Below, piece after piece: positions 1 through 40,027 of a stretch of 64,000 nucleotides of DNA. The DNA is taken from IMG/VR virus record IMGVR_UViG_3300020122_000238, positions 186,001-250,000 of that record; one strand, 5' to 3'. The notes under the pieces are model-generated. The model had not been told where the DNA came from, did not search any database, and saw only the letters and a list, made by a program, of their open reading frames with translations. The number at the start of each line of letters is the position of its first letter. Positions within the stretch are counted from its first letter, which is position 1. A program made the position numbers and the translations under genes.

Positions 1-66
1 TCTCGACCCTCTCGTGATAGCGAGACTCGCAGGTCGACGGCGCCTCATCCTCAAAATCCTCGAAAT

Positions 67-435
67 TCATGGCTTATCCTCCGGAATCACAGACAACACG
101 AGGGAGAGGGCGCCCAAGGCTTCGTTGGCTCTCTCTGCTTGCTTGACGGAATCCGCGAGGAGCTTCTCCTGGTGTTCCACCACCTTCTTCCGGAAGGCGG
201 GGAGAAGCGCTTGTGCCGCCTCATCGAGGGTCTTGCCCGTCCCCATGATGAAAAGGTTCGGCACGCTCTTGTCTCCGAAGGATTGGGATTGGGTGTCGAT
301 CATGTCGATGTGGACATTGCCCACATTCCCAGCGGGGACTTCCGTCAGGATCTTCACCCTGAACGTGAACAGGGATTGCGGCCGAAGAACCAACGCTTGA
401 GCAGCAAGAAGCCTGAAAATCTCTTCTAAAACCAT
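67..435 (-). CDS. hypothetical protein
   Basis: 122-aa ORF with natural composition; divergent from the HNH gene. Confidence 0.6.
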   Translation of the reverse strand: MVLEEIFRLLAAQALVLRPQSLFTFRVKILTEVPAGNVGNVHIDMIDTQSQSFGDKSVPNLFIMGTGKTLDEAAQALLPAFRKKVVEHQEKLLADSVKQAERANEALGALSLVLSVIPEDKP

Positions 436-823
436 GGCTGACCCTTACACCAATCGTCGCTGGGAACGCGCTCAGAGACGTAGAAAACTACGCGAAAAGG
501 CTGTCTCGTATCTTGGGGGTCGCTGTATGAATCCCAAATGTGGGTACGACCGCTGTATCACGGCGTTCGACTTCCATCACGTGGATGCCCGAGAGAAGGA
601 CTTCACCATCTCGGACCGGATGACCTCCTGGAAGGTGATCCGGTCCGAGCTAGATAGGTGCGTGCTTCTCTGCGCAAATTGCCATCGGGAAGTCCACGAT
701 GGACTTCTACCCGGCTTTCTTGCCGACGATGCTGACAGAGGATTCGATCTTGACGGGCCCGATTTTGATGATCCAACCCTCGGGGAGGACGATGTTCCGG
801 ATCTGCTTGAGGATAGCGCCTAA
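434..823 (+). CDS. HNH endonuclease with acidic tail
   Basis: GGRC..CGY...FDFHH and CVLLCANCHREVH motifs. Confidence 0.8.
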   Translation: MADPYTNRRWERAQRRRKLREKAVSYLGGRCMNPKCGYDRCITAFDFHHVDAREKDFTISDRMTSWKVIRSELDRCVLLCANCHREVHDGLLPGFLADDADRGFDLDGPDFDDPTLGEDDVPDLLEDSA

Positions 824-926
824 CTCGGTCGCGGGAGCATCCGGCGGGGCGACAATCTGAATCGTGGCGGTGAGCTTGGTCATGCCGGTAGGATAGAAGG
901 TTGGCCCCCCCAGGCCAACTTTGCGG

Positions 927-1565
927 CTACGGCTTGTCGGAGGTCGGCGGGTAGAAGAAGGGCTCCACGGGCTTCGGAGTGGTTGCCGGTTCCGGAGTGG
1001 GCTCTTCTTTCTCCAGGATCGGGCGATCCTTCACGAGAAGGTCGAGTGCGGCCTCGGTCAGGGCTTCCTGGAAACCCTTCTCGTTCGAGGTCGGGTTGAA
1101 CATGCCGTCGAGGAGGTTCCGGATGCGTTGGGCCTCCTCGTCGATCAGGGTCATGACGCGGGCCGTTGCCGCGTAGAAGTTGTCCTCGGGGATGATTCGC
1201 ATGTATGAACATCCGCCCGGGATCTCGTCCACCGCATTCGGGGTGACCCCCGTCGTGTTGAGGCCCTGCTTGCCTTCGCCGTAGGAACGGCCCGCTCGCG
1301 GCATGCCCTTGTATTCGCTACCAGCGCTGGCGATCGTACCCGTGAAAACGATGGCCCCCAGCTCAGCGATCCAGAAGACCTTGAGCCCCAGAGCGAGAGG
1401 GGTCGACTCCAGGTAGCTGAACAGGGTCCCCATGCTGCGGGACTTCCTGGTCTCGGTGACAAGACCGAGCGGGAGAGCCACTTCTTGGAGGACCCTCGCC
1501 GTGAGCGTGATGGTCTCCGGAATCGTGTTGTTCTGACGGGAGATATTGAATATTTCTCGAAGCAT
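927..1565 (-). CDS. hypothetical protein
   Basis: 212-aa ORF with a Pro-rich C-terminus, in the minus-strand run. Confidence 0.6.
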   Translation of the reverse strand: MLREIFNISRQNNTIPETITLTARVLQEVALPLGLVTETRKSRSMGTLFSYLESTPLALGLKVFWIAELGAIVFTGTIASAGSEYKGMPRAGRSYGEGKQGLNTTGVTPNAVDEIPGGCSYMRIIPEDNFYAATARVMTLIDEEAQRIRNLLDGMFNPTSNEKGFQEALTEAALDLLVKDRPILEKEEPTPEPATTPKPVEPFFYPPTSDKP

Positions 1566-1583
1566 GGGGATGGTCTTTCGGGG

Positions 1584-2120
1584 CTACAGGACGAACTTTT
1601 TGCGAAATGTTCTATCGAACAGCGCGGACTCTTCCGCGGGGGAGCCGTACAGCAATGACATGTTCGAGATGCCAATGGCAGTCGTGGGGTTGATAGCGAG
1701 CTGCCCCACAACATCGGAGAAGCGGCCTTGAATGAAGGTGCATCCGTCGCGAAAGAAGCGAGGGGTTTCTTTCATGATGTCGATCCCCACGTAGTTGATA
1801 CGAGGGTCAAAGAGGACATGCTGCAAGGCCAGGCAACACCCCACGTCGTAGACCGTAAGTCGCTGCTTTTCCCAGCCCATTCTAGCTCCCATCTCTCTGA
1901 TATCGGCTTTCCTCACGAGAAGCTGTGCGAAATTCTCGTAATCCTCAATGAAGCCGAGGAAGCTCATGTCGATTCCGACTGAATCGTCTTCACACACGAG
2001 CTTCTCGACATACTCGATGAAATCTTCTCGGCGGTCGTCTGGGACTCGCCGGAGGAGAAGCTCCATCTGAGACAGCCCCTTTTCAGGAGACATGGGCGGA
2101 CTCGAAGAGGGCCGCCGCAA
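1584..2120 (-). CDS. class I SAM-dependent methyltransferase-like protein
   Basis: VYDVGCC (motif I-like) followed by YVGID; start uncertain. Confidence 0.5.
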   Translation of the reverse strand: MRRPSSSPPMSPEKGLSQMELLLRRVPDDRREDFIEYVEKLVCEDDSVGIDMSFLGFIEDYENFAQLLVRKADIREMGARMGWEKQRLTVYDVGCCLALQHVLFDPRINYVGIDIMKETPRFFRDGCTFIQGRFSDVVGQLAINPTTAIGISNMSLLYGSPAEESALFDRTFRKKFVL

Positions 2121-2379
2121 GACGATGTTTGCAGTGGGCGCCCCGAAGGGTCGAGTCCGGACAGTTGCAGGTCGAGGTGCGGGCGCGACGGTTCACCCGA
2201 ACGATGTAGTCATGGGTGGGCGCGGACTCGACGAAGTAGACGTGGTCACAGCGACCAGGCTTGACGTTGGCGACGAGCGCCTTGGCTCGCTCCATACGGG
2301 GACCAAGGTCGGGATGCTTCGCGCTCCAACGGGCGACGGTGTCGTTCACAGCGGCGGCGGTAGGGGCTTCACGTTTCAT
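2083..2379 (-). CDS. SWIM zinc-finger protein
   Basis: CNCPD..RGAHCKH motif; class I promoter motif 8 nt upstream. Confidence 0.75.
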   Translation of the reverse strand: MKREAPTAAAVNDTVARWSAKHPDLGPRMERAKALVANVKPGRCDHVYFVESAPTHDYIVRVNRRARTSTCNCPDSTLRGAHCKHRLAAALFESAHVS

Positions 2380-2387
2380 GCTTCCTC

Positions 2388-2413
2388 TACAGGATGGGGC
2401 CCGTCTTGATCAA
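2388..2413 (-). promoter_or_regulatory. class I motif TTGATC-N16-TGTA
   Basis: 8 nt upstream of ATG 2379. Confidence 0.75.
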
Positions 2414-2419
2414 CCAGGG

Positions 2420-2653
2420 TCACACGATTCGTTCGAGAGTCCCTGCTTCCAAATCCTGGAGAGCCCGGATGGTCATGTGCCGTACGAGATTGCTGAAGCC
2501 GTCCCCTTGGGAGGCGAACCCGGCGAACCTCAAGACTGCCAGCCATGCGTATTCAACCCTGAACGCGATCGTCTCCCGGACCCAATCGGGCAACCCAGGG
2601 TGATTTTCGTCCAGGAACTTGTTGGTGGCAAGGAGCCGGTCGATCTCAGGCAT
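2420..2653 (-). CDS. hypothetical protein
   Basis: 77-aa ORF in a tightly packed minus-strand run. Confidence 0.55.
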   Translation of the reverse strand: MPEIDRLLATNKFLDENHPGLPDWVRETIAFRVEYAWLAVLRFAGFASQGDGFSNLVRHMTIRALQDLEAGTLERIV

Positions 2654-2657
2654 GGGG

Positions 2658-2924
2658 TCAGATCGTCCCGGGGCGCCACTTCTTCAGCCATATGTCGTAG
2701 AGCTGGTAGCCACCTCCGGCTTTTGGGTATGCCACCTCACACTCAGCGGCACACTGGGTCGCCAGCTTTTGCTCTTCGGGGGTTCCATCCCGCAAGATGT
2801 ACGGGCAGCTCCCACAGCGAGGGTTGAGGGAATGGCTACACCAGTAAGATTCCTTGCAGTTGTCGCGGATGACGATGCGCGCCTGGTTGGGATTGCTCGC
2901 CTTGTAGCCGGGGTACTTGATCAC
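2658..2924 (-). CDS. Cys-rich hypothetical protein
   Basis: 88 aa with several Cys pairs; overlaps the stop of the upstream gene. Confidence 0.6.
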   Translation of the reverse strand: MIKYPGYKASNPNQARIVIRDNCKESYWCSHSLNPRCGSCPYILRDGTPEEQKLATQCAAECEVAYPKAGGGYQLYDIWLKKWRPGTI

Positions 2925-3166
2925 TCGATCACCCTGATCCCGTCGAGGAGCGCGTTGACCTCGGACATCAAGCAGTGCGGATCGGCCGTGCAGATGAGGG
3001 CGTGGGCGAGCAGCCTCGCCCGATGCTGGGCCGTGGCCAGGTTGGCGTTGACGCAGACGTACAGCTCGTAAGGCTTCCCCAGGCCGAGGAGCACGTTGTA
3101 GCCACCGCCGTTCGGAACGCGGGTAATCAGGACTTCGTCACGGGCTGCCTCCAGTTGGGTCGTCAT
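2921..3166 (-). CDS. hypothetical protein
   Basis: 81 aa; promoter motif 8 nt upstream. Confidence 0.65.
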   Translation of the reverse strand: MTTQLEAARDEVLITRVPNGGGYNVLLGLGKPYELYVCVNANLATAQHRARLLAHALICTADPHCLMSEVNALLDGIRVIE

Positions 3167-3174
3167 GAGGGACC

Positions 3175-3201
3175 TACAGAGGGACGGGGTGGGGTGATCA
3201 A
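3175..3201 (-). promoter_or_regulatory. class I motif TTGATC-N17-TGTA
   Basis: 8 nt upstream of ATG 3166; its TGA is the stop of ORF 3198..3632. Confidence 0.7.
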
Positions 3202-3632
3202 CCCTGATTCTCCTCTGTGATGAGACGGTGAACCCGGCGGAGCAGGATCCGCTTCCACTCGACCTTCTCTGGAGTCAGGTGCGACGGAAGCGGGCAGTCA
3301 GGCGAGAGGATGTTGGGGATCCTACCCTCGTGCTCCTTCATCGCGTCCTGGAGCCGCCGAGCGGTGGATTCCCAGTACGAGATCATGGTCTTGACCTTGT
3401 TCGCCTCCTTCTTCAGATCCTCCTTCCCTTCGGGGGTGGCCTTGGGGAACTGCGCCGAGAGCTTGTTCAGCTCCGCGCGAGCATCGTCGAGCTTCTGAAT
3501 GGGCTCCCGGAGCTGCAACCCCAGAACAGCGATCTGTTCCACAGCATTCGCCTCATCCGCTCCGAGCCGTCGGAGCATGAGGCACTCCATGATATCGAGG
3601 GGGTGATCAACGATAACGCGGCGAGGGAGCAT
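3198..3632 (-). CDS. stand-alone seryl-tRNA synthetase N-terminal coiled-coil (tRNA-binding arm)-like protein
   Basis: ML....DHP....L..R start, heptad coiled coil (RAELNKLS) and IPNILSPDCP match the SerRS N-domain ending IPNIPHPDVP; no catalytic domain. Confidence 0.7.
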   Translation of the reverse strand: MLPRRVIVDHPLDIMECLMLRRLGADEANAVEQIAVLGLQLREPIQKLDDARAELNKLSAQFPKATPEGKEDLKKEANKVKTMISYWESTARRLQDAMKEHEGRIPNILSPDCPLPSHLTPEKVEWKRILLRRVHRLITEENQG

Positions 3633-3633
3633 T

Positions 3634-3861
3634 TCAGATTACCCTTGTGGTGACGGTGGGCGGGAGGAGCTGACAGACGACCTCGAATTCCTTCTCGCAG
3701 TCGTCGCACTCGGTCGTGAGCGTGAAAACCCCCCGAGAAGGCGTTTTCCCGGATTCGATGTCGAAGTCATCGAAGTAGAGGGAATTGGACGCGCCGCAGT
3801 ACGGGCAGTTCGCCTCTTCAGGCATGCCCAACATGTGAACGAGGTCGAGGTTCAGGCCCAT
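3634..3861 (-). CDS. zinc-ribbon protein
   Basis: CPYCG and CDDCE pairs; GGTGTA 10 nt upstream. Confidence 0.65.
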   Translation of the reverse strand: MGLNLDLVHMLGMPEEANCPYCGASNSLYFDDFDIESGKTPSRGVFTLTTECDDCEKEFEVVCQLLPPTVTTRVI

Positions 3862-3871
3862 GCTCCCTTAG

Positions 3872-3877
3872 TACACC
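3872..3877 (-). promoter_or_regulatory. class II motif GGTGTA
   Basis: 10 nt upstream of ATG 3861. Confidence 0.6.
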
Positions 3878-3944
3878 GTTTTTAGGGTCCCAACCCCAAA
3901 AACGTCCCACGGCCTTGGAAATTCTGGTAATTTTGGCCGCTTTC

Positions 3945-3950
3945 GGTGTA
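3945..3950 (+). promoter_or_regulatory. class II motif GGTGTA
   Basis: 11 nt upstream of ATG 3962. Confidence 0.6.
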
Positions 3951-3961
3951 GGGATCTGCCC

Positions 3962-6289
3962 ATGGTCGACTTCCAAATCTTCTCTCTGCAAGACGAAACC
4001 AACCAGGACCCGCGTTGGATCCTCCAGAAGCATGGCCGCCCCCTTCCTCCGGCCGGCACCAAGGTCCTGAAGTGCAAGGTCCAGATCCCGGTCACGAATG
4101 GCGTCGCCCCTCCGGAAGATGGGGATGAACTCACGGCGTACTGGGTCGAGCAAGAGGAGACCACGACAAGCGCTCTCTCCTTGAACGTCTATGCGTGGGG
4201 AGACTACGTGTTCGTCGGGGATCACCACTATACCGATATCAGCTACCAGATCGGTGGTGTCGAAGATGTCGATCCGTTCGTCGAGATGCAGGTCATCGGA
4301 GTGCCGGAGCATCGGCAAGTCCAAGTCACCGAGCAGTACGAAGCAACTTTCGGCTACAACTCGTACGGAAGCCGTTGGTCGTCAAGGACCGTCTCGCAAC
4401 TGGACACCTACAACGATCGCTACGACTACGAGCTGAAGCGCTACGTGCCCGGCGCCCCGTGGAACTTCTGCAAGATGAAGGTCACGGCGGGATCTGTAAC
4501 ACAGGAGATCAACCTCAAGATCCACCGCCCCGTGGGCGGCACCCTCACGTTGGACAATGGGGGGTTGCATACCAGGCTGGAGTTCAAGGCTTCCCTGAAC
4601 TTCTTCGGGCTGCCGCTGACGTGGACCGAGTCGCTGGTGCTCAACTCCGAGCGGTATGGGGGCGGTCGCGATCAGCAGTGGTCGAAGATGACCGAGCTTC
4701 TGCGTGGATACAAGATCACGGAGGGCGCGGATGCGCTCTGGGCTCGATTCCTCGACGACAATGCGAAGAACGGGGAAGATGTCGCGAAGATCAAGGGCAT
4801 CGAGGGGCGGAAGGGAGTCAAGGAAGTCCTCGCTCGGCTGCGTGCCGAGGAGCCGCTTCTCGCCAGGTTCTATGACTGGCTCCACGAGAGCAAGACCTCT
4901 GGAGGGACCAGCAACAACACCTTGCTGGCGGCCTTCCTGACGAAGCACGGGAAGAACTACGATGAGGTCGTCGCCGGCCTTCGTACGGCCATGGCAGCGG
5001 CCCCGGGGAAGGTGACCATCACCAAAAACTGGCGCGGTCGTCGGGGTGGTGCCCATTCCTACTCGTACGAGCAGCCGATGGGGCGGAGGGAAATCTGCCT
5101 CTCGCTCCCTGGTGCTTCCGAGAAGAACGAGGAGCAGCGCTCGAAGAAGGAATGGAACATGCGCAAGGGCGCACGGAACCAGGCCATCGGCTTGGGCGTG
5201 TCCCCCGAAGGGCATCCGACCCTCCTTGCGGCCATCGAGGGTCAGGAAATCCCGCTCAGCCTCTTCCACAAGCACGGAGACGCTCTGGCTCCCGTGAACA
5301 CCGAGTTCGACCTCTGGGAGATGGCCCTCGTTCAGCCGGGCTGGAGGCCGATCCTCTCCGAGATCGCCCACGATGCGAGCCGGCGGAACAAGTACGAGAA
5401 GGACATCACGCCCTACCTCGCCTTCCTGTTCCGGCTGCCCAACTACCTCGATCGGAACACGGAGCCGGGCGCGGGCTGGAAGACGATGCCCAAGTTCGTG
5501 AAGTCGGAGTACGAGCTGGAGATGAAGGACGAAGAGGCGTCAGAAGCGGGGACCACCAAGCGTCGTTCCGCCATGACCCCCGACGTCAACAACGCCAAGA
5601 GGACCGTCGTGGTTCCCTACGTCGCCATGGCGATCTCGGGCATTCAGACGACCTACTGCTACTCGCTCGACTACCAGGTCTTCGAGACGATGGACATCGA
5701 CCGTCAGTCGAGCACCCCGATCGTCCGTGAGCTGGAGAAGAAGCTCAACGGACGCGACGACTACGGGATGATGTACTTCACGCTGACGGGAACGGCGAGG
5801 AACACGGGTTACCCCGCCTTCCTGATCATCTTCGAACGACGGAAGACCCTCTCGAAAACGCACGTACACTTTCATCGGGTTCACCCGTGCCGTTCGAAGG
5901 ACGGTCGGGCCACGCCGGCATCCAAGCTTATCGAGGAGGGGTACAGGTACATGGCGGGCAACATCCGGGCGGAAGAGATCTTCGCACAGCAGGGCGACCT
6001 CATCTTCATCAAGACGGACCAGAAGATCGAGATCACCGATGCTGTGAAGCCGGTGAAGGAGTTCGAGTCCCATTGCTTCGTCCCGAAACAAGACAAGCCC
6101 GTCCTCCTGGCTCCGAACACGACGAAGATCAAGAACCGGCTGGGTCACCTCATCTGCGAGGGCATCTTCATGGTGAAGCACCCCGAGCACGAGAACATCA
6201 AGGCGATGCCGCCCGGGACGTACGAGGTCCGGCGCTGCAAGAGCTACGAGAACAACCCCACGGGCGTCTGGGTCCTCAACATCGACTGA
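3962..6289 (+). CDS. 775-aa hypothetical protein with a C-terminal QGD...HxEH...PPGxY beta domain
   Basis: strong GC3 bias; QQGDLIFIK...HPEHENI..MPPGTYEVRR resembles a small domain I recall from phage/bacterial hypothetical proteins. Confidence 0.85.
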   Translation: MVDFQIFSLQDETNQDPRWILQKHGRPLPPAGTKVLKCKVQIPVTNGVAPPEDGDELTAYWVEQEETTTSALSLNVYAWGDYVFVGDHHYTDISYQIGGVEDVDPFVEMQVIGVPEHRQVQVTEQYEATFGYNSYGSRWSSRTVSQLDTYNDRYDYELKRYVPGAPWNFCKMKVTAGSVTQEINLKIHRPVGGTLTLDNGGLHTRLEFKASLNFFGLPLTWTESLVLNSERYGGGRDQQWSKMTELLRGYKITEGADALWARFLDDNAKNGEDVAKIKGIEGRKGVKEVLARLRAEEPLLARFYDWLHESKTSGGTSNNTLLAAFLTKHGKNYDEVVAGLRTAMAAAPGKVTITKNWRGRRGGAHSYSYEQPMGRREICLSLPGASEKNEEQRSKKEWNMRKGARNQAIGLGVSPEGHPTLLAAIEGQEIPLSLFHKHGDALAPVNTEFDLWEMALVQPGWRPILSEIAHDASRRNKYEKDITPYLAFLFRLPNYLDRNTEPGAGWKTMPKFVKSEYELEMKDEEASEAGTTKRRSAMTPDVNNAKRTVVVPYVAMAISGIQTTYCYSLDYQVFETMDIDRQSSTPIVRELEKKLNGRDDYGMMYFTLTGTARNTGYPAFLIIFERRKTLSKTHVHFHRVHPCRSKDGRATPASKLIEEGYRYMAGNIRAEEIFAQQGDLIFIKTDQKIEITDAVKPVKEFESHCFVPKQDKPVLLAPNTTKIKNRLGHLICEGIFMVKHPEHENIKAMPPGTYEVRRCKSYENNPTGVWVLNID

Positions 6290-8912: not shown

Positions 8913-8943
8913 TTTTGGGGGTCTTCCGGTGTACTAGTTGCTC

Positions 8944-10074
8944 ATGGCAAGAGCACGCACCTCCAAGACCCCTGCAACTCCCACTCCCACGGAACCCGCC
9001 ACGGCTGCTCGCGAGCTTATTGTAAGCTTCGATACAACGGGATCGATGTTCCCCTGTCTCACCCAGGTGAGACGGAACGTTGGAGCCCTGATCGAGCGCA
9101 TGTTCCGCGAGGTCCCCGGCATCCGTATTGGGCTCATCGCCCACGGCGACTACTGCGACGGGCCCCGGATGATCAGCAAGCACGAGCTGTCCACCGACAT
9201 GCGCTCGCTCAGTCGCTTCGTCGAGACGACGGATTCGACGGGCGGCGGAGATGCGCCTGAGTGCTACGAAGCAGTTCTCCACGAAGCGAGGGGCTTCAAC
9301 TGGACGTCCGGCGAATCCAAGGCCCTTGTGATGATCGGGGATGAAGTTCCCCACGGCCCGGAAGAGCGGCAGAACCGGCACCACTACGACTGGCGCAACG
9401 AGGCCAACAGTCTTCGAGACATGGGCGTCAAAATCTACGGCGTCCAGTGCCTCAACCGCCGACACGCGACCAGCTTCTACTCGACGATCGCTCGCGTCAG
9501 CGGGGGCTACCACCTTCAGCTCGACCAGTTCGCGAACATCACAGAGCTGCTCCTCGCCGTCTCGTATCAGCAGGCGGGGGAGACCCAGCTCCAGAACTAC
9601 GAAGCCGAAGTCCAGGGCTCCGGCCGGATGACTCGGAACCTCGACGCGATCTTCGCTCGGCTGCGAGGGCGGACGGTGGCGGCCACCATGGGCACGACCG
9701 ATCTCCGGGCTGTCCCCTCGGGCCGGTTCCAGGTCCTCACGGTCGACCGCGAGATGGCCATCAAGGCGTTCTGCGAGGGGCAAGGCGTCACTTTCGGCAA
9801 GGGCAGGGGCTTCTACGAGCTGTCCAAGCCCGAGACGGTTCAGGGCACCAAGGAAATCGTTCTCATGGATCGTCGGACTGGGGACCTCTTCACGGGGCCG
9901 AAGGCTCGGGAGATGCTCTCGCTCCCGCTGCACGATGAAGACGTTCGCCTGCGTCCGGCTCACCTCGAAGAGTACGCCGTCTTCATTCAATCTACCTCTG
10001 TAAATAGAAAACTGGTGACTGGGACGCGCCTTCTGTACGAGATCCCGGACTGGGATGCCGCGGTGGCAGCCTGA
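8944..10074 (+). CDS. vWA domain protein
   Basis: MIDAS-like SFDTTGSM, GGGDAPECYE and LVMIGDE; GGTGTA 8928-8933 lies 10 nt before ATG 8944. Confidence 0.85.
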   Translation: MARARTSKTPATPTPTEPATAARELIVSFDTTGSMFPCLTQVRRNVGALIERMFREVPGIRIGLIAHGDYCDGPRMISKHELSTDMRSLSRFVETTDSTGGGDAPECYEAVLHEARGFNWTSGESKALVMIGDEVPHGPEERQNRHHYDWRNEANSLRDMGVKIYGVQCLNRRHATSFYSTIARVSGGYHLQLDQFANITELLLAVSYQQAGETQLQNYEAEVQGSGRMTRNLDAIFARLRGRTVAATMGTTDLRAVPSGRFQVLTVDREMAIKAFCEGQGVTFGKGRGFYELSKPETVQGTKEIVLMDRRTGDLFTGPKAREMLSLPLHDEDVRLRPAHLEEYAVFIQSTSVNRKLVTGTRLLYEIPDWDAAVAA

Positions 10075-11831: not shown

Positions 11832-13505
11832 ATGAAACGACGTCTTGCCCTCGGGCTTCTCTTCCTGGTCGCTCTGACCCTGTACTACTACGCCCCGGCG
11901 TTCGTTCGCTGGCGGGTGAGCGAGAAACTCGCAGAGCGCTACCCGGATGTGAAGGTGGACCTCATCGAACCCCAATGGGGGAAGACGGTCCTTCACACCG
12001 TGACGTTCGATCGAGATTGGGTCTGCGGGAAGCTCGACACCGTCACGATCACCTGGAAGGACGCCATCACAATCCAGGGGGGCACCGTTCGCGTGTACCC
12101 CGAAAAGCGGCCCGCATCGACTGGGGAGGGGTCTGGCAAAGACATCACCATCACGGACCTCGAAGGTACAGTGATATCCCCCGAAGGTGTCTTTAGCTTC
12201 GGAGGTCTCTCCCTGCATGGCCCCATGGTGACCATCGACAATGTCGGGGCGCACAGGTATGGCCGAAATGCCTACCTCAATGGGGTCAAGTTCAACAAGA
12301 ACCACCTGGACTTCGTTCACGTCGATTCGGCGTCGATGGTCATCCCGGAAGACGGCCCTGACCAGCTCGGGACGTTGACCGCCACAGCTATCGAGGTCTC
12401 CCGCAACCCCGAAAAGGAATGGCGGGCGTCCATCGAACATGCCGAGATCGCGGAGCTGAAAGCGAGCGCTTCGTCAATCCGTCTCGAAGAGTACACGGGC
12501 GAAGACAAGATCCACCGAATGGCCATCCTTCTGGGGGAAGCCACCATCGAGCACCCGAAGCTCTTCAGCAAGCCTCTGACCGTGCATCAGATGCGAATCC
12601 CGGTGGATGCCTACACGTTCGAGAGCGGAGAATTCACGGTCTGGCACAACTCGGCCTTCACCCCTGTGATCAAGGGGAACTTCAGGAAGAAGACCCTTGA
12701 GGGGAAGGGCTCCTGTTCTGATTGGCTTGAGACATTGCCAGACCAGCTCAGGAACGAGTCCGTCAAGCAATTGGACATGACGGGGAACATGTCGTTCGAT
12801 GTCTCGACGGATCCTCCGCACGCCTTCTTTCTCTACACGTGCAAGGTTTCGTGTGATGTCCCGCTGTTCAAGGCTCTCAAAGAGGTGTTCGTTTACCCTA
12901 TCCTTCAGGCGGATGGATCTCCTGGTCTCCGATCGTCGGGACCGAAGGGGAAAGACTGGACGCCACTCTCCCAGGTGAGCCCTGATGTGGTCACGGCTTT
13001 GACCACCATGGAAGACCCGGGCTTCTTCCAGCATCGAGGGCTCAGTGGGATGGCCATCGAGAACTCGTTCCAGATGAACCTCAAGGCGAACAAGTTCGTG
13101 CGCGGGGGATCGACCCTCACGATGCAGCTCGCGAAGAACCTCTGGCTCACTCAGGAGAAGACCCTCGGCCGCAAGGTTCAGGAGGCCTTCTTGACGATGG
13201 GCTTGGAAAGCTGCCTCTCGAAGGAAGAGATCCTCGCGCTCTACGTGAATGTGGTCGAGTTCGGCAAGGGGCTCTACGGGATCAGCCCGGCGGCCCGGAA
13301 GTACTTCAAGACCTCGGCCATGGGCTTGGCTCCCGAGGAGGCCTTCTACCTCGTGTCGATCCTCCCCCATCCTCGGACCGCCAATCCTCCGGATGCGGCC
13401 ACCTTGACCCGCGTGAAGAAGCTGATAGCCCGGTTCACCAAGGAAGGCCGGATCCCCGATATGGGGATCAACGACAGCCCGATCGACGACGCCGGCTGGG
13501 AGTAG
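11832..13505 (+). CDS. membrane-anchored monofunctional peptidoglycan transglycosylase (GT51)
   Basis: N-terminal TM; EDPGFFQHRG, GGSTLTMQLAKNL, RKVQE, KEEILALYVN and YGISPAARKYF motifs; no transpeptidase domain. Confidence 0.9.
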   Translation: MKRRLALGLLFLVALTLYYYAPAFVRWRVSEKLAERYPDVKVDLIEPQWGKTVLHTVTFDRDWVCGKLDTVTITWKDAITIQGGTVRVYPEKRPASTGEGSGKDITITDLEGTVISPEGVFSFGGLSLHGPMVTIDNVGAHRYGRNAYLNGVKFNKNHLDFVHVDSASMVIPEDGPDQLGTLTATAIEVSRNPEKEWRASIEHAEIAELKASASSIRLEEYTGEDKIHRMAILLGEATIEHPKLFSKPLTVHQMRIPVDAYTFESGEFTVWHNSAFTPVIKGNFRKKTLEGKGSCSDWLETLPDQLRNESVKQLDMTGNMSFDVSTDPPHAFFLYTCKVSCDVPLFKALKEVFVYPILQADGSPGLRSSGPKGKDWTPLSQVSPDVVTALTTMEDPGFFQHRGLSGMAIENSFQMNLKANKFVRGGSTLTMQLAKNLWLTQEKTLGRKVQEAFLTMGLESCLSKEEILALYVNVVEFGKGLYGISPAARKYFKTSAMGLAPEEAFYLVSILPHPRTANPPDAATLTRVKKLIARFTKEGRIPDMGINDSPIDDAGWE

Positions 13506-14882: not shown

Positions 14883-17477
14883 ATGCCCTCACGATCTTTC
14901 GGAATCACCCCCAGTCTCTTCCTCGTCCTCGCCACCGTCAGCACGGCTACGGCGGCTACGGCGGGCCGTGTGCCCGTCAACAACTACGTCGCCATCGACG
15001 GGTCCGGCAGCATGTACGGGACCATCGACGACCTGCGAAACCAGGTCAAGATGAAGCTCCCGTCGATCATGGGGCCCGACGACACGCTCTCGATGGTCGT
15101 CTTCTCCAGCCGTGGCGAGGTCCACAAGGTCTGCGAGGGCGTCAAGACTTGGGATTTCAAGTCCGTCTACCCGCTCATCGATCGCCTGGTCCGCGCGACC
15201 AACATGACCGGCTTCATCGACCCCCTGAAGGAGATTGCCGCCATGCGCGATCGGGTCGGGGCGAAGCACCCGGGGGCCAACTCGTTCTGGTTCCTCTCCG
15301 ACGGCGACGAGAACCAGGGCAGCAGGGCTCAGGTCATCGAAGCCATGAAGCTCGCGTCCGCCAAGATGGACAGCGTGACGGTCGTCGAGTTCGGTCGGTA
15401 CGCCAACCGCGCGCTCCTGACCGACATGGCCACCACGGGCAACGGTCGCCGCATCTTCGCCCCCAACTTCGCGGCCTACGAGCCGGAGTTCGAGGCCACC
15501 ATGGGCCGCAAGCTCACGGGCGGCAAGCGTGTCGACGTCAAGCTCGACGGGGAGCCCGTCGCGGGCCTCGTGTACGGCTTCCAGGGCAACGATCTGCTCA
15601 CGTTCTCGGTCGCCAACGGACACGTCTCGGTTCCCAAGGACGTCTCGTTCATCTCGTACCTGTCGGCCAGCGCCGTAGGGGAAAACCAACACACCCTGGA
15701 GACCTTCGCGAAGGTCTCCGCCATGGGTGCAACTGCGAACCCCAGGGCCATTTCTCCCACAAGCGAGATGGCCCTCGGCGTCAACCATGCATACGCGGCT
15801 CTCAGCCTCTTCGCGGTGCGCCTCAAGGGCGAGGTCGTGATCCCGCTCCTCAAGTCCCTCGGCGATGTGAAGCTCATCGAGGCCTTCTCGACCTGCTTCG
15901 GCAAGGAGAAGTACTCCGACTTCGAGAAGCTCGCCCGTGAAGCGGCCTTCGGTCGCGGCCGGTTCGAGAAGGGCTACAACCCCGACGCCGTCCCTGCGGA
16001 CGACGCCTTCACGGTCTTCCGCCTCCTGGAGATCCTTACCAAGAACCAGGGCAACAAGCTCCGGATCGAGGAGTTCGAGAAGAGCTACGCGAAGATCGGC
16101 CGCGCGAAGATCGCTTCCGCCGAGAACCTCACGGTGGATGAAGCCGCGAAGGTCGAGGAGTACAACGCCGAGATCGACGTGCTCCGTGCGGACCTGAAGG
16201 GCAAGCGGTCGAGCATGGTCATCGAGCAGATCAAGGAGAAGATCGCCGCCGTCGAGGCGAAGATTCAGGTCATCCTGGACTCGAAGTCTCCGGCCCTCAA
16301 GTTCGAGGCGACCCCGGTCCCGGAAGGGATCCCGATGACGAACCTCATCTTCAACGAGGAGACCCCCAACGTCTCCGTGCAGACGACGCGTCAGGGCAAG
16401 GTGGCCCTCAAGGATCGGATCCAGGCGGAGATGGCTCGCCTCGTCGCGGACAGCAAGGCGAACCCCGCGAACGACAGCGAGAACGCAGACAAGCTCCTCC
16501 AGATCGCCAAGATCCCCGAGGTGATGGACACCTTCCGCTTCCGCAACTACGCGATCCTGAAGGATGGCTGGTGCAACGCCGACGAGCTTCCGGTGCGTCT
16601 GACGAAGGCGACCCTGGACGAGCTGGTCGCGGCGGGCTTCACGATGGCCATGCTCAAGGACCCGCCTGCCAGCTTCCCGACGGCGGGAAATGTCGACGTC
16701 ACGATCATCCTCAAGGGGATGCCGACAATGAACCGCCAGATGGTGAAGGAGACCAGCGCTCGCAAGCTCTTCGAGCTGGAGTACCGCCTCACCAAGCTCC
16801 GGGCGGAGCAGAAGGTCTACAAGGCCTTCAAGACCGAGACGGTGGGGGCGAAGAAGTCGGAAGGCTTCGTGGCCACCTACGGCGAGTACGCGGAGAAGTT
16901 CCTCAAGGAGCTGGGGCTCACGGAGTCCGGAGGCTTCGCTCCGAAGGTGACGACGGCCGACCCGATCGACTTCTACATGAGCCGGATCCTCACGGTCATG
17001 CTCTACGAGGAGGGCGCCAAGGACAAGATCGCGGCCGGCAAGGCAGCGACGGGCAAGCTCGACACGCTCCCCAGCATGGCGGAGCTGAACAAGAAGATCG
17101 CTGCGAACGGCAAGATGGCCGGCGGGGCGGCGCTCATGGCAGAGGTCGTCAAGGAGGTCGAGGCCTTCAAGAAGTCCGATGTCTACACGAAGGCGAAGGA
17201 CCCGGAGGCGCTCTTCGCGGCCTGGATCGAGGGACAGGCCGATCAGACGGTCAAGGAGACGCGTGCGGCGCTCCGTGAGAAGGCCCAGATGGTCTTCTCG
17301 ATCATCGTCGGGCAGGTCTGGTTCTCGGAGCCGGAGTACGCGACCCCGGTCGCCTTCACGATCCCGACGAAGAAGGACCCCAGGAACCTCCTCGGCACCC
17401 TGGCGACGATGACGACGGTCGACGGCTCCAAGGTCGACTTCATCGTCGGGCAGGAAGAGGAAAAGGTCCTCGTCTAG
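14883..17477 (+). CDS. large vWA domain protein (864 aa)
   Basis: N-terminal MIDAS VAIDGSGSM and FLSDGDEN; very strong GC3 bias. Confidence 0.85.
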   Translation: MPSRSFGITPSLFLVLATVSTATAATAGRVPVNNYVAIDGSGSMYGTIDDLRNQVKMKLPSIMGPDDTLSMVVFSSRGEVHKVCEGVKTWDFKSVYPLIDRLVRATNMTGFIDPLKEIAAMRDRVGAKHPGANSFWFLSDGDENQGSRAQVIEAMKLASAKMDSVTVVEFGRYANRALLTDMATTGNGRRIFAPNFAAYEPEFEATMGRKLTGGKRVDVKLDGEPVAGLVYGFQGNDLLTFSVANGHVSVPKDVSFISYLSASAVGENQHTLETFAKVSAMGATANPRAISPTSEMALGVNHAYAALSLFAVRLKGEVVIPLLKSLGDVKLIEAFSTCFGKEKYSDFEKLAREAAFGRGRFEKGYNPDAVPADDAFTVFRLLEILTKNQGNKLRIEEFEKSYAKIGRAKIASAENLTVDEAAKVEEYNAEIDVLRADLKGKRSSMVIEQIKEKIAAVEAKIQVILDSKSPALKFEATPVPEGIPMTNLIFNEETPNVSVQTTRQGKVALKDRIQAEMARLVADSKANPANDSENADKLLQIAKIPEVMDTFRFRNYAILKDGWCNADELPVRLTKATLDELVAAGFTMAMLKDPPASFPTAGNVDVTIILKGMPTMNRQMVKETSARKLFELEYRLTKLRAEQKVYKAFKTETVGAKKSEGFVATYGEYAEKFLKELGLTESGGFAPKVTTADPIDFYMSRILTVMLYEEGAKDKIAAGKAATGKLDTLPSMAELNKKIAANGKMAGGAALMAEVVKEVEAFKKSDVYTKAKDPEALFAAWIEGQADQTVKETRAALREKAQMVFSIIVGQVWFSEPEYATPVAFTIPTKKDPRNLLGTLATMTTVDGSKVDFIVGQEEEKVLV

Positions 17478-17980: not shown

Positions 17981-18135
17981 TTACCCATCCCTCGAACATC
18001 ACCCAGGATGAAGCTCGGAACATCGGTCTTGCTGTGCTGACAGCAGGACTTGTGGCTGTTGTTGACAGCGTCATACGGCTCGGCTTCTACGAGTTTCAAG
18101 TGTGGCGCGAAGCACGTCGGAAAAAGCCCGAGTAA
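17977..18135 (+). CDS. small membrane protein (52 aa, not in ORF track)
   Basis: TTGA overlap start; IGLAVLTAGLVAVV hydrophobic stretch followed by a basic tail. Confidence 0.45.
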   Translation: MITHPSNITQDEARNIGLAVLTAGLVAVVDSVIRLGFYEFQVWREARRKKPE

Positions 18136-18229
18136 CAAGCTACACCCCGGTGTAGCCGGGTGGCATGAAGCTACTCGGAATTTCTGGGCTTGTCGTTTTC
18201 TATTGCCCCACACAGACACCCAGGACATA

Positions 18230-19558
18230 ATGCGGGCTATGTCTTACCGCAAGATATCAACACGGCGTTTGGAAGTCTACGGCATCTCGGGCAACAAGGG
18301 ACATGGCAAGGACACCTTCGCCAACCTCATCACACAGGCAAACACATCTTACAAAGTTGTCCCTTTCGCAGGGGCACTGAAGCGTATGTCAGCCAGGATC
18401 TTTGGGCTGACATACGCTCAGATGAACGATCCCTCCCTCAAAGAGATACCCCTTCCTCATGCCCGGGACATGGATCTGTTCGTCCCAGCCATGAAAGCCG
18501 AGACTGGACTACACATACAACCGGCGGGCAAGATTGCCCATAGTCCTCGTGAGGTCATGCAGTTTTTCGGGACAGAATATGTCCGAAGGATTCAGGACGA
18601 CTACTGGATCCAAAAACTACTCGCTGAGGTGGGAAACTCTCGACAAGTGCTCATTCCCGACGTCCGCTTTCCGAACGAAGCGGCTGCACTACGTTCTTAT
18701 GGGGGCATCATAATCAAGGTGGAACGGATCGATGCTCCCGTTCCGAAGGATGGGCATCTCTCCGAGACAGAGATGGCCAAAATCATCCCGGATCTTCTAG
18801 TGGGCGCACGGACAGGGGATCTGTCCCTTCCGTCTCGGATCGCGCGTCTCATTGCGATGAACCGTTTCGATTCTGCTACCAGCTACGACTATCGTAAGTC
18901 TAAGGAAGCAATTGCTTCCTATACATCAGGGAAGAGCGCCGAGGAGAGTTCTCTTCTCCTCGGCCACAAGCACCCCTATGCGCTCTACAACACCCTAGAT
19001 TACTATGGGGTACAGCGCCGAAAGCAGGCCCCAAACCGTGTCCACCATAAAGTTGTTGATGGGGTGGTTGGTAAATTCTGCATTCGGTGTGTGTGGCAAC
19101 CTCTGATTGAGTTCAACATGAGCACGAAGGCATGGGACGGTAAACATAGCTTGTGCCGTGCTTGCGCTTCTTTGGATCACAAGGATCGATACCAGAAGTA
19201 CGGGAAGACGGACAGCCTGTCGAGGGTCTACGCGATTTCGAAGAAACAAGCGGCGCAGCGTGGCATTCCCTTCAACTTGAGGGCGAGTGACATCCAATTC
19301 CTTTGGAATGCACAGGGAGGTCGTTGTACTTACAGCGGGCTGGAGATGACGACCGAGCTGAGATCCCCCAACAAGGTCACGATTGACAGAATTGATTCAT
19401 CGAAGGGGTATGAGATCGACAATATCGTTCTCTGCGGCTACCGCGTCAACTTGATGAAACGAGAAATGTCCTTGAGCGAGTTCAAGGGAATGATCCGCAC
19501 GTTGTACGAAAATCTGGCGGGAAGCTCATTCGGGTCGTGCGGCCCGGGGCTGGGCTGA
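18230..19558 (+). CDS. deoxynucleoside monophosphate kinase fused to an HNH-type endonuclease
   Basis: GNKGHGKDT P-loop, PREVMQFFGTE, DVRFPNE; C-terminal CTYSG...TIDRIDSSKGYEIDNIVLC. Confidence 0.85.
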   Translation: MRAMSYRKISTRRLEVYGISGNKGHGKDTFANLITQANTSYKVVPFAGALKRMSARIFGLTYAQMNDPSLKEIPLPHARDMDLFVPAMKAETGLHIQPAGKIAHSPREVMQFFGTEYVRRIQDDYWIQKLLAEVGNSRQVLIPDVRFPNEAAALRSYGGIIIKVERIDAPVPKDGHLSETEMAKIIPDLLVGARTGDLSLPSRIARLIAMNRFDSATSYDYRKSKEAIASYTSGKSAEESSLLLGHKHPYALYNTLDYYGVQRRKQAPNRVHHKVVDGVVGKFCIRCVWQPLIEFNMSTKAWDGKHSLCRACASLDHKDRYQKYGKTDSLSRVYAISKKQAAQRGIPFNLRASDIQFLWNAQGGRCTYSGLEMTTELRSPNKVTIDRIDSSKGYEIDNIVLCGYRVNLMKREMSLSEFKGMIRTLYENLAGSSFGSCGPGLG

Positions 19559-21439: not shown

Positions 21440-22156
21440 ATGAGTCACACGTACGAATATCCCCGACCGTCTGTCACGGTCGACTGCGTTGTCTTCGGCG
21501 TCGCAGACCATCTCAAGGAGATGCACGTTCTCCTGGTCCGCCGTGGCTCCGCCCCCTTTCAGGGGTTGTGGGCTCTTCCGGGCGGGTTCGTCGAGACCTC
21601 GGATACCAGAGACCAGGGTGAGTCCCTGGACGAAGCGGCGCAACGTGAGCTGAGCGAGGAGACGGGAGCCCAAGTGGGTTTTCTGGAGCAGCTCGGCACG
21701 TATGGGACGCCCGGAAGGGATCCGCGAGGTCGAGTGATCTCGGTCGCCTACTACGCTCTGGTCCGCCTCGAAGACCATCCGGTCAAGGGTGGTGATGACG
21801 CGGCAGAGGCCAAGTGGTGGCCTCTGCCGAAAGCCCTCCGGCTATACAAGGCTTTCGACCACGACAAGATTCTCAAGGATGCTTGGGCGAGGCTACAGGC
21901 GAAGGTTCGGTATGCCCCCATCGGGTTCAACCTTCTTCCGCCGAAGTTCTCTCTGACGGAGCTGCAATCCCTCTACGAGCTGATCCTCAATCGGACGCTC
22001 GACAAGCGGAACTTCCGCAAGCGCATCCTGGCAATGGGCATCCTCAAAGAGGCGGGTGTCCAGGTTGGTGTCCCGCACCGACGAGCGTGCCTCTACAGAT
22101 TCGACAGCGTTGCTTACAAGCGAGCTGTTCGTGACGGTTTCAACTTCGAGATTTGA
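21440..22156 (+). CDS. nrtR: NrtR-family Nudix/wHTH transcriptional regulator
   Basis: [44 protein letters not shown] and [10 protein letters not shown]; adjacent to nadV. Confidence 0.85.
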
Positions 22157-22166
22157 TGGAGACCCC

Positions 22167-26861: not shown

Positions 26862-27106
26862 TCATGGGACGCCTGGTAGTTACCGTGAGGGGAGAATGCG
26901 AGCACCACAAGCGACGCGGACATCTACTGTGATGTCCGCGTCGCTTGTGGTGCAACGATCCTCCGCGTCGAGATGATAGGGGACTACCCCTCCACGGGCG
27001 CCCACATCTACGTGAAGTGCCAAAAATCTCCCGCCGAGCTGTCCGCGGCTATCGACGCTGCGGACGAGATCCCGCAATATTCAATCAGGACGGAAGTAGA
27101 GCGAAA

Positions 27107-39994: not shown

Positions 39995-40027
39995 ACTGAG
40001 GATCTTCCTAAAAAAACCCTATACACG

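What the first reader, a model, noticed from the sequence alone, without database searches (positions are those of the whole stretch)
3198..3632. Stand-alone seryl-tRNA synthetase tRNA-binding arm
Seen: the whole 144-aa protein aligns by eye to the SerRS N-terminal domain through the IPN...D.P junction, then ends; no catalytic domain appears in the window. Established: this coiled-coil arm binds the long variable arm of tRNA-Ser/Sec. Inference: a tRNA-binding decoy or shield that protects or sequesters class II tRNAs from host tRNA-targeting defences, biases translation, or interferes with host SerRS.
Basis: partly seen in the sequence, partly recalled or inferred. Interest (0 to 1): 0.7.

Follow-up and report, generated by a model that had tools for sequence, protein, structure and literature searches.

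The report
Free-standing SerRS tRNA-binding arm in megaphage
A giant bacteriophage carries, as a small gene of its own, the coiled-coil "arm" that seryl-tRNA synthetase uses to grip serine tRNAs; the arm has no enzyme attached and carries a new tail helix, and it belongs to a rare, conserved phage family that probably handles tRNAs.

Summary
Window 3198-3632 (minus strand) encodes a 144-aa protein that matches Pfam Seryl_tRNA_N end to end, above the curated cut-off. A profile of its family matches the N-terminal 124 residues of solved SerRS at E=5e-17. An AlphaFold2 model (pLDDT 96.9) superposes on SerRS N-domains over about 105-118 residues.

It is not a gene fragment:
- About 25 cluster representatives of 130-176 aa share the whole length.
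- They share a C-terminal helix (residues 121-143) that SerRS lacks.
- dN/dS against a 94%-identical copy is 0.12.

It is not a split SerRS. No class-II catalytic core is found in the window's 275-kb record, in two close relatives, or in a 446-kb family-bearing phage rated 100% complete.

Four tRNA-contacting positions of SerRS helix 1, the invariant Asn among them, are conserved.

In four of about ten lineages a PTH2 peptidyl-tRNA hydrolase lies just downstream, and in two of those a Thg1-like enzyme follows it. The window's lineage has lost that neighbour. A 90%-identical relative carries 40 tRNAs, including two long-arm tRNA-Ser.

Best reading: a tRNA-Ser/class-II tRNA-binding accessory of the phage's tRNA toolkit. 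No tRNA binding has been measured.

The parts
3198..3632 (-). Gene for the 144-aa free-standing SerRS-N-like protein ('SerN'), stop codon included
   Evidence: ORF and translation. PF02403 40.1 bits, above the 28.2 cut-off. Family of full-length homologues. dN/dS 0.12 against L005.
3570..3632 (-). Residues 1-21: two short N-terminal helices (4-9, 11-19), with family-conserved M1 L2 P3 R4 I7 E16 L18 R21
   Evidence: AF2 secondary structure. Column conservation. Aligns with SerRS residues 1-21.
3441..3560 (-). Residues 25-64: long helix 1 of the hairpin, the tRNA-facing helix in SerRS. It carries the conserved polar stripe D/E49, R/K52, N56, S59, plus invariant F62.
   Evidence: Contact residues of human SerRS (D51, N54, N58, S61) from PMC4666401, mapped by the invariant-Asn register.
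3327..3434 (-). Residues 67-102: long helix 2 of the antiparallel coiled coil
   Evidence: Hydrophobic a/d positions and the K81/E88/E95/E102 stripe are conserved.
3285..3320 (-). Residues 105-116: the I-P-N-I-x-x-P-D-x-P-L junction that leads into the catalytic domain in SerRS
   Evidence: P106 and N107 are invariant; P109 and P114 are 19 of 20. Aligned to the SerRS junction.
3204..3272 (-). Residues 121-143: family-specific amphipathic C-terminal helix (L131 invariant; K127, R132, H135, L137, E140, Y/E141, N142 conserved). It has no counterpart in the SerRS alignments.
   Evidence: AF2 helix with block pLDDT 98. A matching helix is predicted in a distant subfamily member. Conservation. Foldseek and VIA-align SerRS matches mostly stop at about residue 109-122.
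3634..3861 (-). Upstream 75-aa Cys4 zinc-ribbon gene. Its stop is 1 nt before the SerN ATG, so the two are probably co-translated.
   Evidence: Weak zinc-ribbon Pfam hits. 48% identical orthologue in the same place in L002. Not conserved across the wider family.
2921..3166 (-). Downstream 81-aa gene of unknown function. It lies where PTH2 lies in relatives.
   Evidence: No Pfam, PHROG or PADLOC hit. No similarity to PTH2. Conserved in L005 with dN/dS 0.18.
2083..2379 (-). SWIM zinc-finger gene, a synteny anchor shared with the 52%-identical relative
   Evidence: PF04434. 68% identical orthologue in L002.

Best explanation
The gene encodes a stable, free-standing copy of the seryl-tRNA synthetase tRNA-binding arm. 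The family-specific C-terminal helix probably caps the base of the arm where the catalytic domain used to pack, or serves as a docking site. I infer that the protein still recognises the shape of tRNAs with a long variable arm, tRNA-Ser first, through the polar face of helix 1. I infer further that it acts as a non-catalytic tRNA-handling factor, a specificity or presentation subunit or chaperone, in the megaphage's own tRNA maintenance toolkit. Ancestrally it was encoded next to a PTH2 peptidyl-tRNA hydrolase, and in one branch a Thg1-like 5'-end repair enzyme as well. In the window's lineage that neighbour has been lost from the locus and the arm gene persists alone. Shown: homology, autonomy, purifying selection, conserved contact residues, the gene neighbourhood, and tRNA-Ser genes in a close relative. 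Inferred: tRNA binding, the tRNA class bound, and the link to salvage.
For: Homology: PF02403 above cut-off over its full length. All 20 members hit it. Family profile against SerRS 2dq3 gives E=5.4e-17 over residues 1-124 with only a 2-residue gap at the hairpin tip, so arm length is kept. The AF2 model has pLDDT 96.9. Foldseek's top 12 hits are SerRS N-domains, most with TMq about 0.62-0.70 and rmsd about 2.3-4 A (1sry_A: TMq 0.44, rmsd 5.3 A).

Autonomy and selection: 22 cluster representatives of 89-176 aa (most 130-176; two are partial, 89-90 aa) in 1.84 billion; most match end to end (four only to about residue 115), and more turn up. The C-terminal helix is conserved and is predicted again in a 35%-identical subfamily. 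dN 0.028, dS 0.226, ratio 0.12.

Contact residues: human SerRS D51, N54, N58 and S61 contact the variable arm (PMC4666401). The equivalent family columns are acidic in 17 of 20, basic in 16 of 20, Asn in 19 of 20 and Ser in 13 of 20.

Context: PTH2 lies directly downstream in L002/3/4, L035/L037 and L036, and two genes further on in L018/19. Thg1 follows PTH2 in L018 and L037. The 90%-identical relative G001 has 40 tRNAs plus a tmRNA, including tRNA-Ser of 85 and 88 nt; the 88-nt one folds with a 7-bp variable arm, while the 85-nt one folds no better than shuffles (z -0.43). The window's record stops about 7 kb short of that array.

Precedent: SerRS acts as a tRNA-Ser-presenting partner for METTL6, whose entries appear among the hits. 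Stand-alone aaRS RNA-binding domains (KTSC) and PTH2/Thg1 are noted in jumbo phages (PMC7824862).
Against: No binding data exist. Most family members are net acidic, with pI 5.0-6.8, which is unusual for an RNA binder acting alone. In SerRS the catalytic domain of the other subunit supplies much of the tRNA affinity. The equivalents of the SerRS contact residues R9, R44 and R47 are not conserved. PTH2 is adjacent in only about four of ten lineages. All these phages share wider synteny, for example RNase HII a few kb downstream, so adjacency may be partly inherited rather than selected. The window's own lineage lacks adjacent PTH2 and lacks Thg1, CCA-adding enzyme and RtcB in the 58-73% of the genome held. 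Structure alone does not tell this hairpin from generic alpha-hairpins, which reach VIA Z 10-11, the same as SerRS.
Confidence: 0.45

Rival explanations
1. Shield or decoy. The arm coats the variable arm of tRNA-Ser and so blocks host toxins or defences that pick out tRNA-Ser by that arm, such as MenT/AbiEii-type nucleotidyltransferases.
For: The same evidence for retained variable-arm recognition applies. MenT3 inactivates tRNA-Ser and needs its long variable loop (PMC11162799 and PMC11541572). The window carries other likely counter-defence or repair genes: NAMPT and a 2H/LigT/Acb1-like phosphoesterase.
Against: No toxin of that kind is tied to this phage's unknown host. A stoichiometric shield would also hinder SerRS, which uses the same surface. 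There is no PADLOC or anti-defence family match. The neighbourhood in relatives points to salvage enzymes rather than anti-defence islands.
Confidence: 0.2
2. Repurposed coiled coil. The arm survives as a protein-protein scaffold or adaptor, with the C-terminal helix and N-terminal helices as an interaction module, and no longer binds tRNA.
For: Net acidic composition. The strongest family-specific conservation includes non-SerRS features: R4, F62 and the C-terminal helix. Long alpha-hairpins of this shape serve many protein-binding roles. The SerRS hairpin is used as an inert rigid module in engineered chimeras (PDB 5eiu and 8fd6).
Against: The SerRS-specific polar stripe on helix 1 is kept across members only about 30% identical, including the Asn that is invariant in SerRS. 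That is not needed for a mere scaffold. tRNA enzymes recur next door.
Confidence: 0.2
3. Host shut-off or translation bias. The arm sequesters host tRNA-Ser or competes with host SerRS to depress host translation while phage tRNAs escape.
For: It would compete for the same tRNA surface as SerRS. The phage lineage brings its own tRNA-Ser genes.
Against: SerRS recognition is shape-based, with few base contacts, so phage tRNA-Ser would be bound too. The isolated arm is expected to bind weakly. The gene is not in a recognisable early or host-takeover cluster.
Confidence: 0.07
4. Split seryl-tRNA synthetase. The arm works in trans with a separately encoded arm-less catalytic subunit, as PylSn does with PylSc.
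For: Split aaRS are known, and the arm is essential for tRNA-Ser charging in SerRS (established knowledge).
Against: No PF00587 core at E<=1 in G000, G001 or G002, and none at E<=0.1 in G003, a family-bearing phage record rated 100% complete, or in G004. The C-terminal helix occupies the chain where the core would continue.
Confidence: 0.05
5. Decaying remnant of a once complete phage SerRS gene, with no function.
For: It is a truncated form of a longer enzyme, and one source annotated a homologue simply as seryl-tRNA synthetase.
Against: The same length and ends recur in about 25 divergent clusters. dN/dS is 0.12. A conserved new C-terminal helix is present. No catalytic-domain remnants lie downstream.
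Confidence: 0.03

Closest known systems
N-terminal tRNA-binding domain of bacterial-type seryl-tRNA synthetase (Pfam PF02403, 'tRNA-binding arm')
   Same: Homologous over the whole domain: two short N-terminal helices, an antiparallel hairpin with helices of about 40 residues and the same length, the invariant helix-1 Asn with its polar neighbours, and the IPN...P.VP exit.
   Different: No catalytic domain follows. A conserved amphipathic helix (residues 121-143) follows instead. SerRS R8/R9 is replaced by a hydrophobic residue, and a family-specific R4 and F62 appear. It is encoded by phages and most members are net acidic.
Free-standing tRNA-binding domains derived from aaRS (Trbp111/Arc1p-type OB-fold proteins; PylSn of split bacterial PylRS; KTSC-domain proteins noted in jumbo phages)
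   Same: A non-catalytic RNA-binding module of an aaRS, encoded as a small separate protein. Jumbo-phage KTSC proteins were likewise proposed to support phage translation or ribosome rescue (PMC7824862).
   Different: Different folds and different parent enzymes. PylSn has a cognate catalytic partner, which is absent here. As far as my searches show, no free-standing SerRS arm has been described in phages.
SerRS as tRNA-Ser-presenting cofactor of METTL6 (PDB 8p7b, 8p7d)
   Same: A precedent for the SerRS arm selecting tRNA-Ser on behalf of another enzyme. This is the adaptor logic proposed here for PTH2 or other partners (entries seen).
   Different: There the full dimeric SerRS is used. Here only the arm exists, and no partner has been shown.
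Short PF02403-only proteins in metagenomic bacteria/CPR, and the Seryl_tRNA_N accessory cluster next to type XI-like retrons
   Same: They show that the arm occurs outside full-length SerRS (AFDB clusters of 113-169 aa; Atlas clusters of 134-138 aa; retron survey PMC13712802).
   Different: The AFDB matches align only to residues 1 to about 117-121 and do not cover the C-terminal helix. They may be fragments or split genes. The retron-linked proteins belong to host defence loci, not to phages.

Membership tests
Seryl_tRNA_N domain (PF02403) | Score above Pfam's gathering cut-off over most of the model | tested here: met
   40.1 bits against 28.2, profile positions 1-107 of 108. 20 of 20 family members match.
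Seryl_tRNA_N domain (PF02403) | Fold: short N-terminal helices plus a long antiparallel two-helix arm of SerRS length | tested here: met
   AF2 pLDDT 96.9 with helices 4-9, 11-19, 25-64 and 67-102. SerRS chains align over residues 1-109 at 1.7-2.0 A. Generic hairpins reach the same Z, so the fold alone is not decisive.
Seryl_tRNA_N domain (PF02403) | Invariant helix-1 Asn and neighbouring polar residues that contact the tRNA variable arm | tested here: met
   N56 in 19 of 20, S59 in 13 of 20, basic residue at 52 in 16 of 20, acidic residue at 49 in 17 of 20. These map to human N58, S61, N54 and D51. The equivalents of R9, R44 and R47 are not kept.
Seryl_tRNA_N domain (PF02403) | Binds tRNA-Ser/tRNA-Sec through the long variable arm | not testable with these tools
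   Needs EMSA, anisotropy or CLIP.
Seryl-tRNA synthetase, the enzyme (TIGR00414 / class II aaRS) | Class-II catalytic core with motifs 1-3 in the same chain | tested here: not met
   The protein ends at residue 144. TIGR00414 scores 26.5 bits against a 301.65 cut-off. No PF00587 in the record.
Split aaRS (PylSn/PylSc-like two-gene synthetase) | A separately encoded cognate catalytic subunit in the same genome | tested here: not met
   No PF00587 match in G000, G001 or G002, nor in G003, rated 100% complete, or G004. The window's own genome is only 58% held, so the test is not exhaustive for it.
Pseudogene or gene fragment | Relaxed selection, variable ends, no lineage-wide conservation | tested here: not met
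   dN/dS 0.12. Most of 22 cluster representatives (130-176 aa) match over their full length. A conserved C-terminal helix is present.
Known phage protein families or defence/anti-defence families | Significant match to a PHROG or PADLOC model or to a sequenced phage | tested here: not met
   Best PHROG E=0.013. PADLOC gives only a 12.5-bit coiled-coil hit. No tblastn hit in 50,697 phage records. BFVD gives only generic coiled coils.

The most novel reading that the evidence does not exclude
The arm is a class-II-tRNA selector that megaphages use to aim or protect. It either docks through its new C-terminal helix onto PTH2-type hydrolases or other tRNA enzymes to make them tRNA-Ser-specific, or it masks the variable arm from MenT/AbiEii-like toxins. 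Either would be a previously unrecognised way for a virus to manage one tRNA class, by borrowing only the recognition module of a synthetase.
Probability: 0.2. Interest if true: 0.8.

Novelty: new variant of a known kind. Interest (0 to 1): 0.58.

Why it matters
Free-standing pieces of aminoacyl-tRNA synthetases have repeatedly turned out to have functions of their own. Here the piece is the only known protein module that recognises tRNAs by their long variable arm. It is kept under selection in megaphages that carry dozens of tRNAs and, in relatives, PTH2, Thg1, CCA-adding enzyme and RtcB.

If it binds tRNA-Ser, it offers three things:
- a simple, testable handle on how giant phages protect, repair or sort one class of tRNA during infection;
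- a minimal natural tRNA-Ser/Sec recognition module of 144 aa for biochemistry and engineering;
- a candidate antagonist of toxins that target tRNA-Ser.

If it does not bind tRNA, it documents how a synthetase domain is stabilised by a new capping helix and reused for something else.

Tried and rejected
- Complex prediction of the 52%-identical homologue P0003 with its overlapping PTH2 neighbour scored 0.00 and gave no verdict. This is neither evidence for nor against binding.
- tblastn of the protein against 50,697 phage records found no match.
- PHROGs, PADLOC and BFVD structures gave nothing meaningful.
- VIA-align re-ranking put generic alpha-hairpins (ESCRT-III, prefoldin, dynein stalk) at the same Z as SerRS. 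Structural Z therefore cannot prove the relationship; the sequence profile does.
- The promoter and terminator scan of 1-4300 found no more sites than shuffles do.
- I looked for a conserved upstream partner. The small ORFs upstream of family members are unrelated, apart from the close L002 orthologue of the zinc ribbon.
- I looked for PTH2 remnants downstream of the gene in the window and in L005 and found none.
- I tested whether absence of tRNAs in the window's record is meaningful. It is not, because the record ends about 7 kb before the relative's tRNA array.
- A stop-codon reassignment check on the 275-kb record was uninformative. The standard code already gives 92.5% cover by open frames in this GC-rich DNA, so there is no sign that another code is needed.
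- The search for related loci with the full family alignment failed for lack of a conserved 7-10-residue stretch, so genome contigs could not be scanned.
- Literature searches found no description of a free-standing SerRS arm in phages.

Full report
**What is there**

Window 3198-3632 holds, on the minus strand, an ATG-to-TGA frame of 144 codons. Its ATG lies one base after the stop of a 75-aa Cys4 zinc-ribbon gene (3634-3861). An 81-aa gene follows after 31 bases (2921-3166). All of these genes run leftward, away from a divergent 775-aa gene that starts at 3962.

The window is bases 186001-250000 of a 275.3-kb IMG/VR virus record. The record is linear, CheckV rates it 58% complete, and its GC content is 58%. 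Close copies of the region occur in sediment, microbial-mat and soil metagenomes.

**Is it really the SerRS arm?**

Yes, on sequence evidence.
- The protein scores 40.1 bits (E=4.6e-10) on Pfam Seryl_tRNA_N, above the 28.2-bit cut-off. The match covers profile positions 1-107 of 108.
- The full serS model matches only its N-terminal 129 positions, at 26.5 bits against a 301.65-bit cut-off.
- Alone, the protein finds SerRS chains in the PDB at E=9e-5.
- A profile of 20 family members finds Aquifex SerRS residues 1-124 at E=5.4e-17, with a single 2-residue gap at the hairpin tip. Nine further SerRS entries follow.
- All 20 members hit PF02403, and no other Pfam family is shared by more than one member.

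The structural evidence agrees but is weaker.
- An AlphaFold2 model built on the family alignment has mean pLDDT 96.9 and pTM 0.83. Its helices span residues 4-9, 11-19, 25-64, 67-102 and 121-143.
- Foldseek's first twelve PDB hits are SerRS N-domains, most with TM by query about 0.62-0.70 (one 0.44), 118-127 aligned columns and rmsd mostly 2.3-4 A.
- On re-alignment, generic alpha-hairpins reach the same Z (10-11) as SerRS. Only the SerRS chains also cover the N-terminal helices (residues 1-109 at 1.7-2.0 A).

So the sequence profile proves the relationship, and shape alone would not.

**It is a family, not a fragment**

An exhaustive HMMER scan of 1.84 billion cluster representatives found 23 proteins at E<=1e-3. 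Twenty-two of them are 89-176 aa long (most 130-176; two are partial, 89-90 aa), and most match the query from end to end; four match only to about residue 115. A profile search added three more.

Two of the shorter hits (P0022, P0026) look like truncated genuine SerRS, and I left them out of the family alignment.

Family-wide conserved positions:
- N-terminus: M1, L2, P3, R4, I7, E16, L18, R21.
- Arm: G38, D/E49, R52, N56, S59, F62, L73, K81, E88, E95, E102.
- Junction: I105, P106, N107, P109, D112, P114.
- C-terminal helix: K127, L131 (invariant), R132, H135, L137, E140, Y141, N142.

That last helix has no counterpart in the SerRS alignments. It is predicted with block pLDDT of about 98 in this protein. 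It is predicted again in a member only about 35% identical, whose model has pLDDT 89.7 and a helix at 130-155. Its hydrophobic residues follow an a/d spacing. I therefore infer that it packs on the base of the arm, where the catalytic domain would sit. I could not inspect coordinates to confirm this.

Two IMG/VR contigs, of 350 kb (G001) and 128 kb (G002), carry a 94%-identical copy. Against it the gene shows 19 synonymous and 8 non-synonymous codon differences. That gives dN 0.028, dS 0.226 and a ratio of 0.12, similar to the neighbouring SWIM gene at 0.08.

**Not a split synthetase**

No class-II core (PF00587) is detectable in four places:
- the window's whole record;
- G001, rated 73% complete, and G002;
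- G003, a 446.5-kb phage record rated 100% complete that carries a family member;
- G004.

The positive controls found the core in all 14 reference genomes each time.

**Does it still look able to bind tRNA?**

[quoted passage not shown] Residues R9, R44, R47, D51, N54, N58 (absolutely conserved) and S61 make the contacts, and K104 and R107 contact the elbow. D51A abolishes activity (PMC4666401).

I anchored the register on the invariant Asn. The family columns then read as follows:

| Human SerRS | Family column | Conservation |
|---|---|---|
| N58 | 56 | Asn in 19 of 20 |
| S61 | 59 | Ser in 13 of 20 |
| N54 | 52 | basic in 16 of 20 (Arg in Aquifex as well) |
| D51 | 49 | acidic in 17 of 20 |
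| R47 | 45 | not conserved |
| R44 | 42 | not conserved |
| R8/R9 | 8 | hydrophobic; an invariant R4 sits one turn earlier |

The conserved positions 49, 52, 56 and 59 are spaced so that they fall on one face of the helix. Arm length is preserved.

Against strong independent binding, most members are net acidic, with pI 5.0-6.8. The basic face of the C-terminal helix seen in this protein is limited to its close subfamily.

**Context**

A 52%-identical homologue (P0003) lies on 69-kb and 144-kb metagenome contigs that are collinear with the window. The shared order is zinc ribbon, arm gene, SWIM, HNH, RNase HII, D12 methylase and topoisomerase IB.

On those contigs the arm gene's stop overlaps by 4 bp the start of a 122-aa PTH2 peptidyl-tRNA hydrolase (PF01981, 71.6 bits).

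In a second subfamily, about 33% identical, two arrangements occur:
- UvrD, Kelch, arm, PTH2, an inserted GIY-YIG gene, Thg1, NAD ligase, in G003 (L037), with the same arm-PTH2 adjacency in G004.
- UvrD, a prenyltransferase-like gene, arm, two small genes, PTH2, Thg1, in L018/L019.

The PTH2 proteins are orthologous, at 38-62% identity.

Six other lineages, the window's among them, have no PTH2 within the sequence held. No PTH2 remnant is left in the window.

G001 has only a weak 105-aa PTH2 paralogue, 260 kb away beside a tRNA with anticodon tca.

G003 also has a CCA-adding enzyme and RtcB. G000 and G001 do not in the parts held, and they lack Thg1 as well.

The window's record contains no tRNA gene. 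However, its first base aligns to G001 position 235760 at 93% identity, and G001's tRNA array begins at 242.6 kb. That array holds 40 tRNAs and a tmRNA. It includes tRNA-Ser(gct) of 85 nt and tRNA-Ser(gga) of 88 nt; the latter folds with a 7-bp variable-arm stem. G003 has 58 tRNA matches.

**Interpretation**

Shown:
- The protein is a homologue of the SerRS arm that has become an autonomous, selected phage protein with an added helix.
- The phages that carry it encode no SerRS core.
- They do carry large tRNA sets.
- In several lineages a PTH2, with or without Thg1, lies next to the gene.

Inferred:
- The protein binds long-variable-arm tRNAs through helix 1.
- It serves the phage's tRNA maintenance, as a selector, presenter or chaperone.
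- The C-terminal helix acts as a cap or a docking surface.

Toxins of the MenT/AbiEii type do single out tRNA-Ser by its variable loop (PMC11162799 and PMC11541572). Nothing here ties such a toxin to this phage.

The remaining readings rank as follows:
- A tRNA-independent scaffold role is the main alternative.
- The split-synthetase reading is largely excluded.
- The pseudogene reading is excluded.

**Novelty**

I found no description of a free-standing SerRS arm in phages.
- It is absent from PHROGs, from 50,697 sequenced phage records and from BFVD.
- A broad comparative survey of jumbo phages lists PTH2, Thg1, CCA-adding enzyme and a stand-alone LysRS KTSC domain, but no seryl element (PMC7824862).
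- Short PF02403-only proteins exist in metagenomic bacteria and next to some retrons, but the matches seen do not cover the C-terminal helix.

I rate it a new variant of a known kind. The domain is known, and so is the practice of freeing aaRS tRNA-binding modules. This particular module, its capping helix and its phage setting are new. Interest is moderate to high because the hypothesis is specific and cheap to test.

Noticed in passing
window 22056-23552 (+): NAMPT-type nicotinamide phosphoribosyltransferase (NAPRTase 202 bits plus NAMPT_N). This is an NAD+ salvage gene, of the sort phages use against NAD-depleting defences.
   Followed up: no
window 26945-28423 (+) and 28423-29337 (+): A 492-aa adenylosuccinate-synthetase-like protein (214 bits) with an N-terminal extension, directly followed by a protein-kinase-like gene. 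A PurA/PurZ-type enzyme in a phage could point to modified purine metabolism. I did not examine this.
   Followed up: no
window 39791-41065 (+): A 424-aa protein with a 2H phosphoesterase / LigT domain and a weak Acb1 match. It could be an RNA-end repair or cyclic-nucleotide-degrading (anti-CBASS-like) enzyme.
   Followed up: no
window 11832-13505 (+), 30562-31689 (+), 18050-19558 (+), 8938-10074 (+), 14883-17477 (+): A PBP-type transglycosylase (157 bits), a peptidoglycan-binding-domain protein, a dNMP-kinase-like protein and a VWA-domain protein. An 864-aa protein also matches phrog_2426 (unknown function) at E=1.7e-121.
   Followed up: no
L015 (G001:241000-258500) and L016: The close relative's tRNA array has 40 tRNAs and a tmRNA (tag ANDNALVPMQMAA). 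ARAGORN calls five tRNA-Leu of only 74-78 nt beside one of 86 nt. Those five would be Leu anticodons on tRNAs without a long variable arm, if the calls are right.
   Followed up: no
L017 2162-2234 and 2532-2849 (G001); L040 1361-1434 (G003): A weak, short PTH2 paralogue sits beside a suppressor-type tRNA in two distant phages: anticodon tca in G001 and cta in G003. A crude stop-codon check of the window's record showed no need for another code.
   Followed up: partly
L005 6432-6750 (G001): The 94%-identical relative has an extra Cys-rich small ORF of about 105 aa inserted immediately after the arm gene's stop. The window lacks it, so the spot downstream of the gene is an indel hot spot.
   Followed up: partly
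G000:C1:181680-182459 (outside the window); L002 10561-11397: A eukaryotic-type topoisomerase IB (PF01028) is conserved at 73% identity between the window's phage and the 52% relative. RNase HII and a D12 methyltransferase lie nearby.
   Followed up: no
L018 2863-3219 and 1954-2580; L031 6844-7287; L032 12345-12474: Other translation- or RNA-linked genes lie near family members in relatives: a ribosomal L7/L12 C-terminal-domain protein, a Pol-beta-type nucleotidyltransferase, an EpmC-like (EF-P hydroxylase) protein and a Pnkp-like kinase-phosphatase.
   Followed up: no
window 434-823 (+) and 2083-2379 (-): An HNH-like endonuclease (weak match, with paralogues elsewhere in the record) and a SWIM zinc-finger protein flank the operon. 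Both are conserved in the 52% relative.
   Followed up: partly
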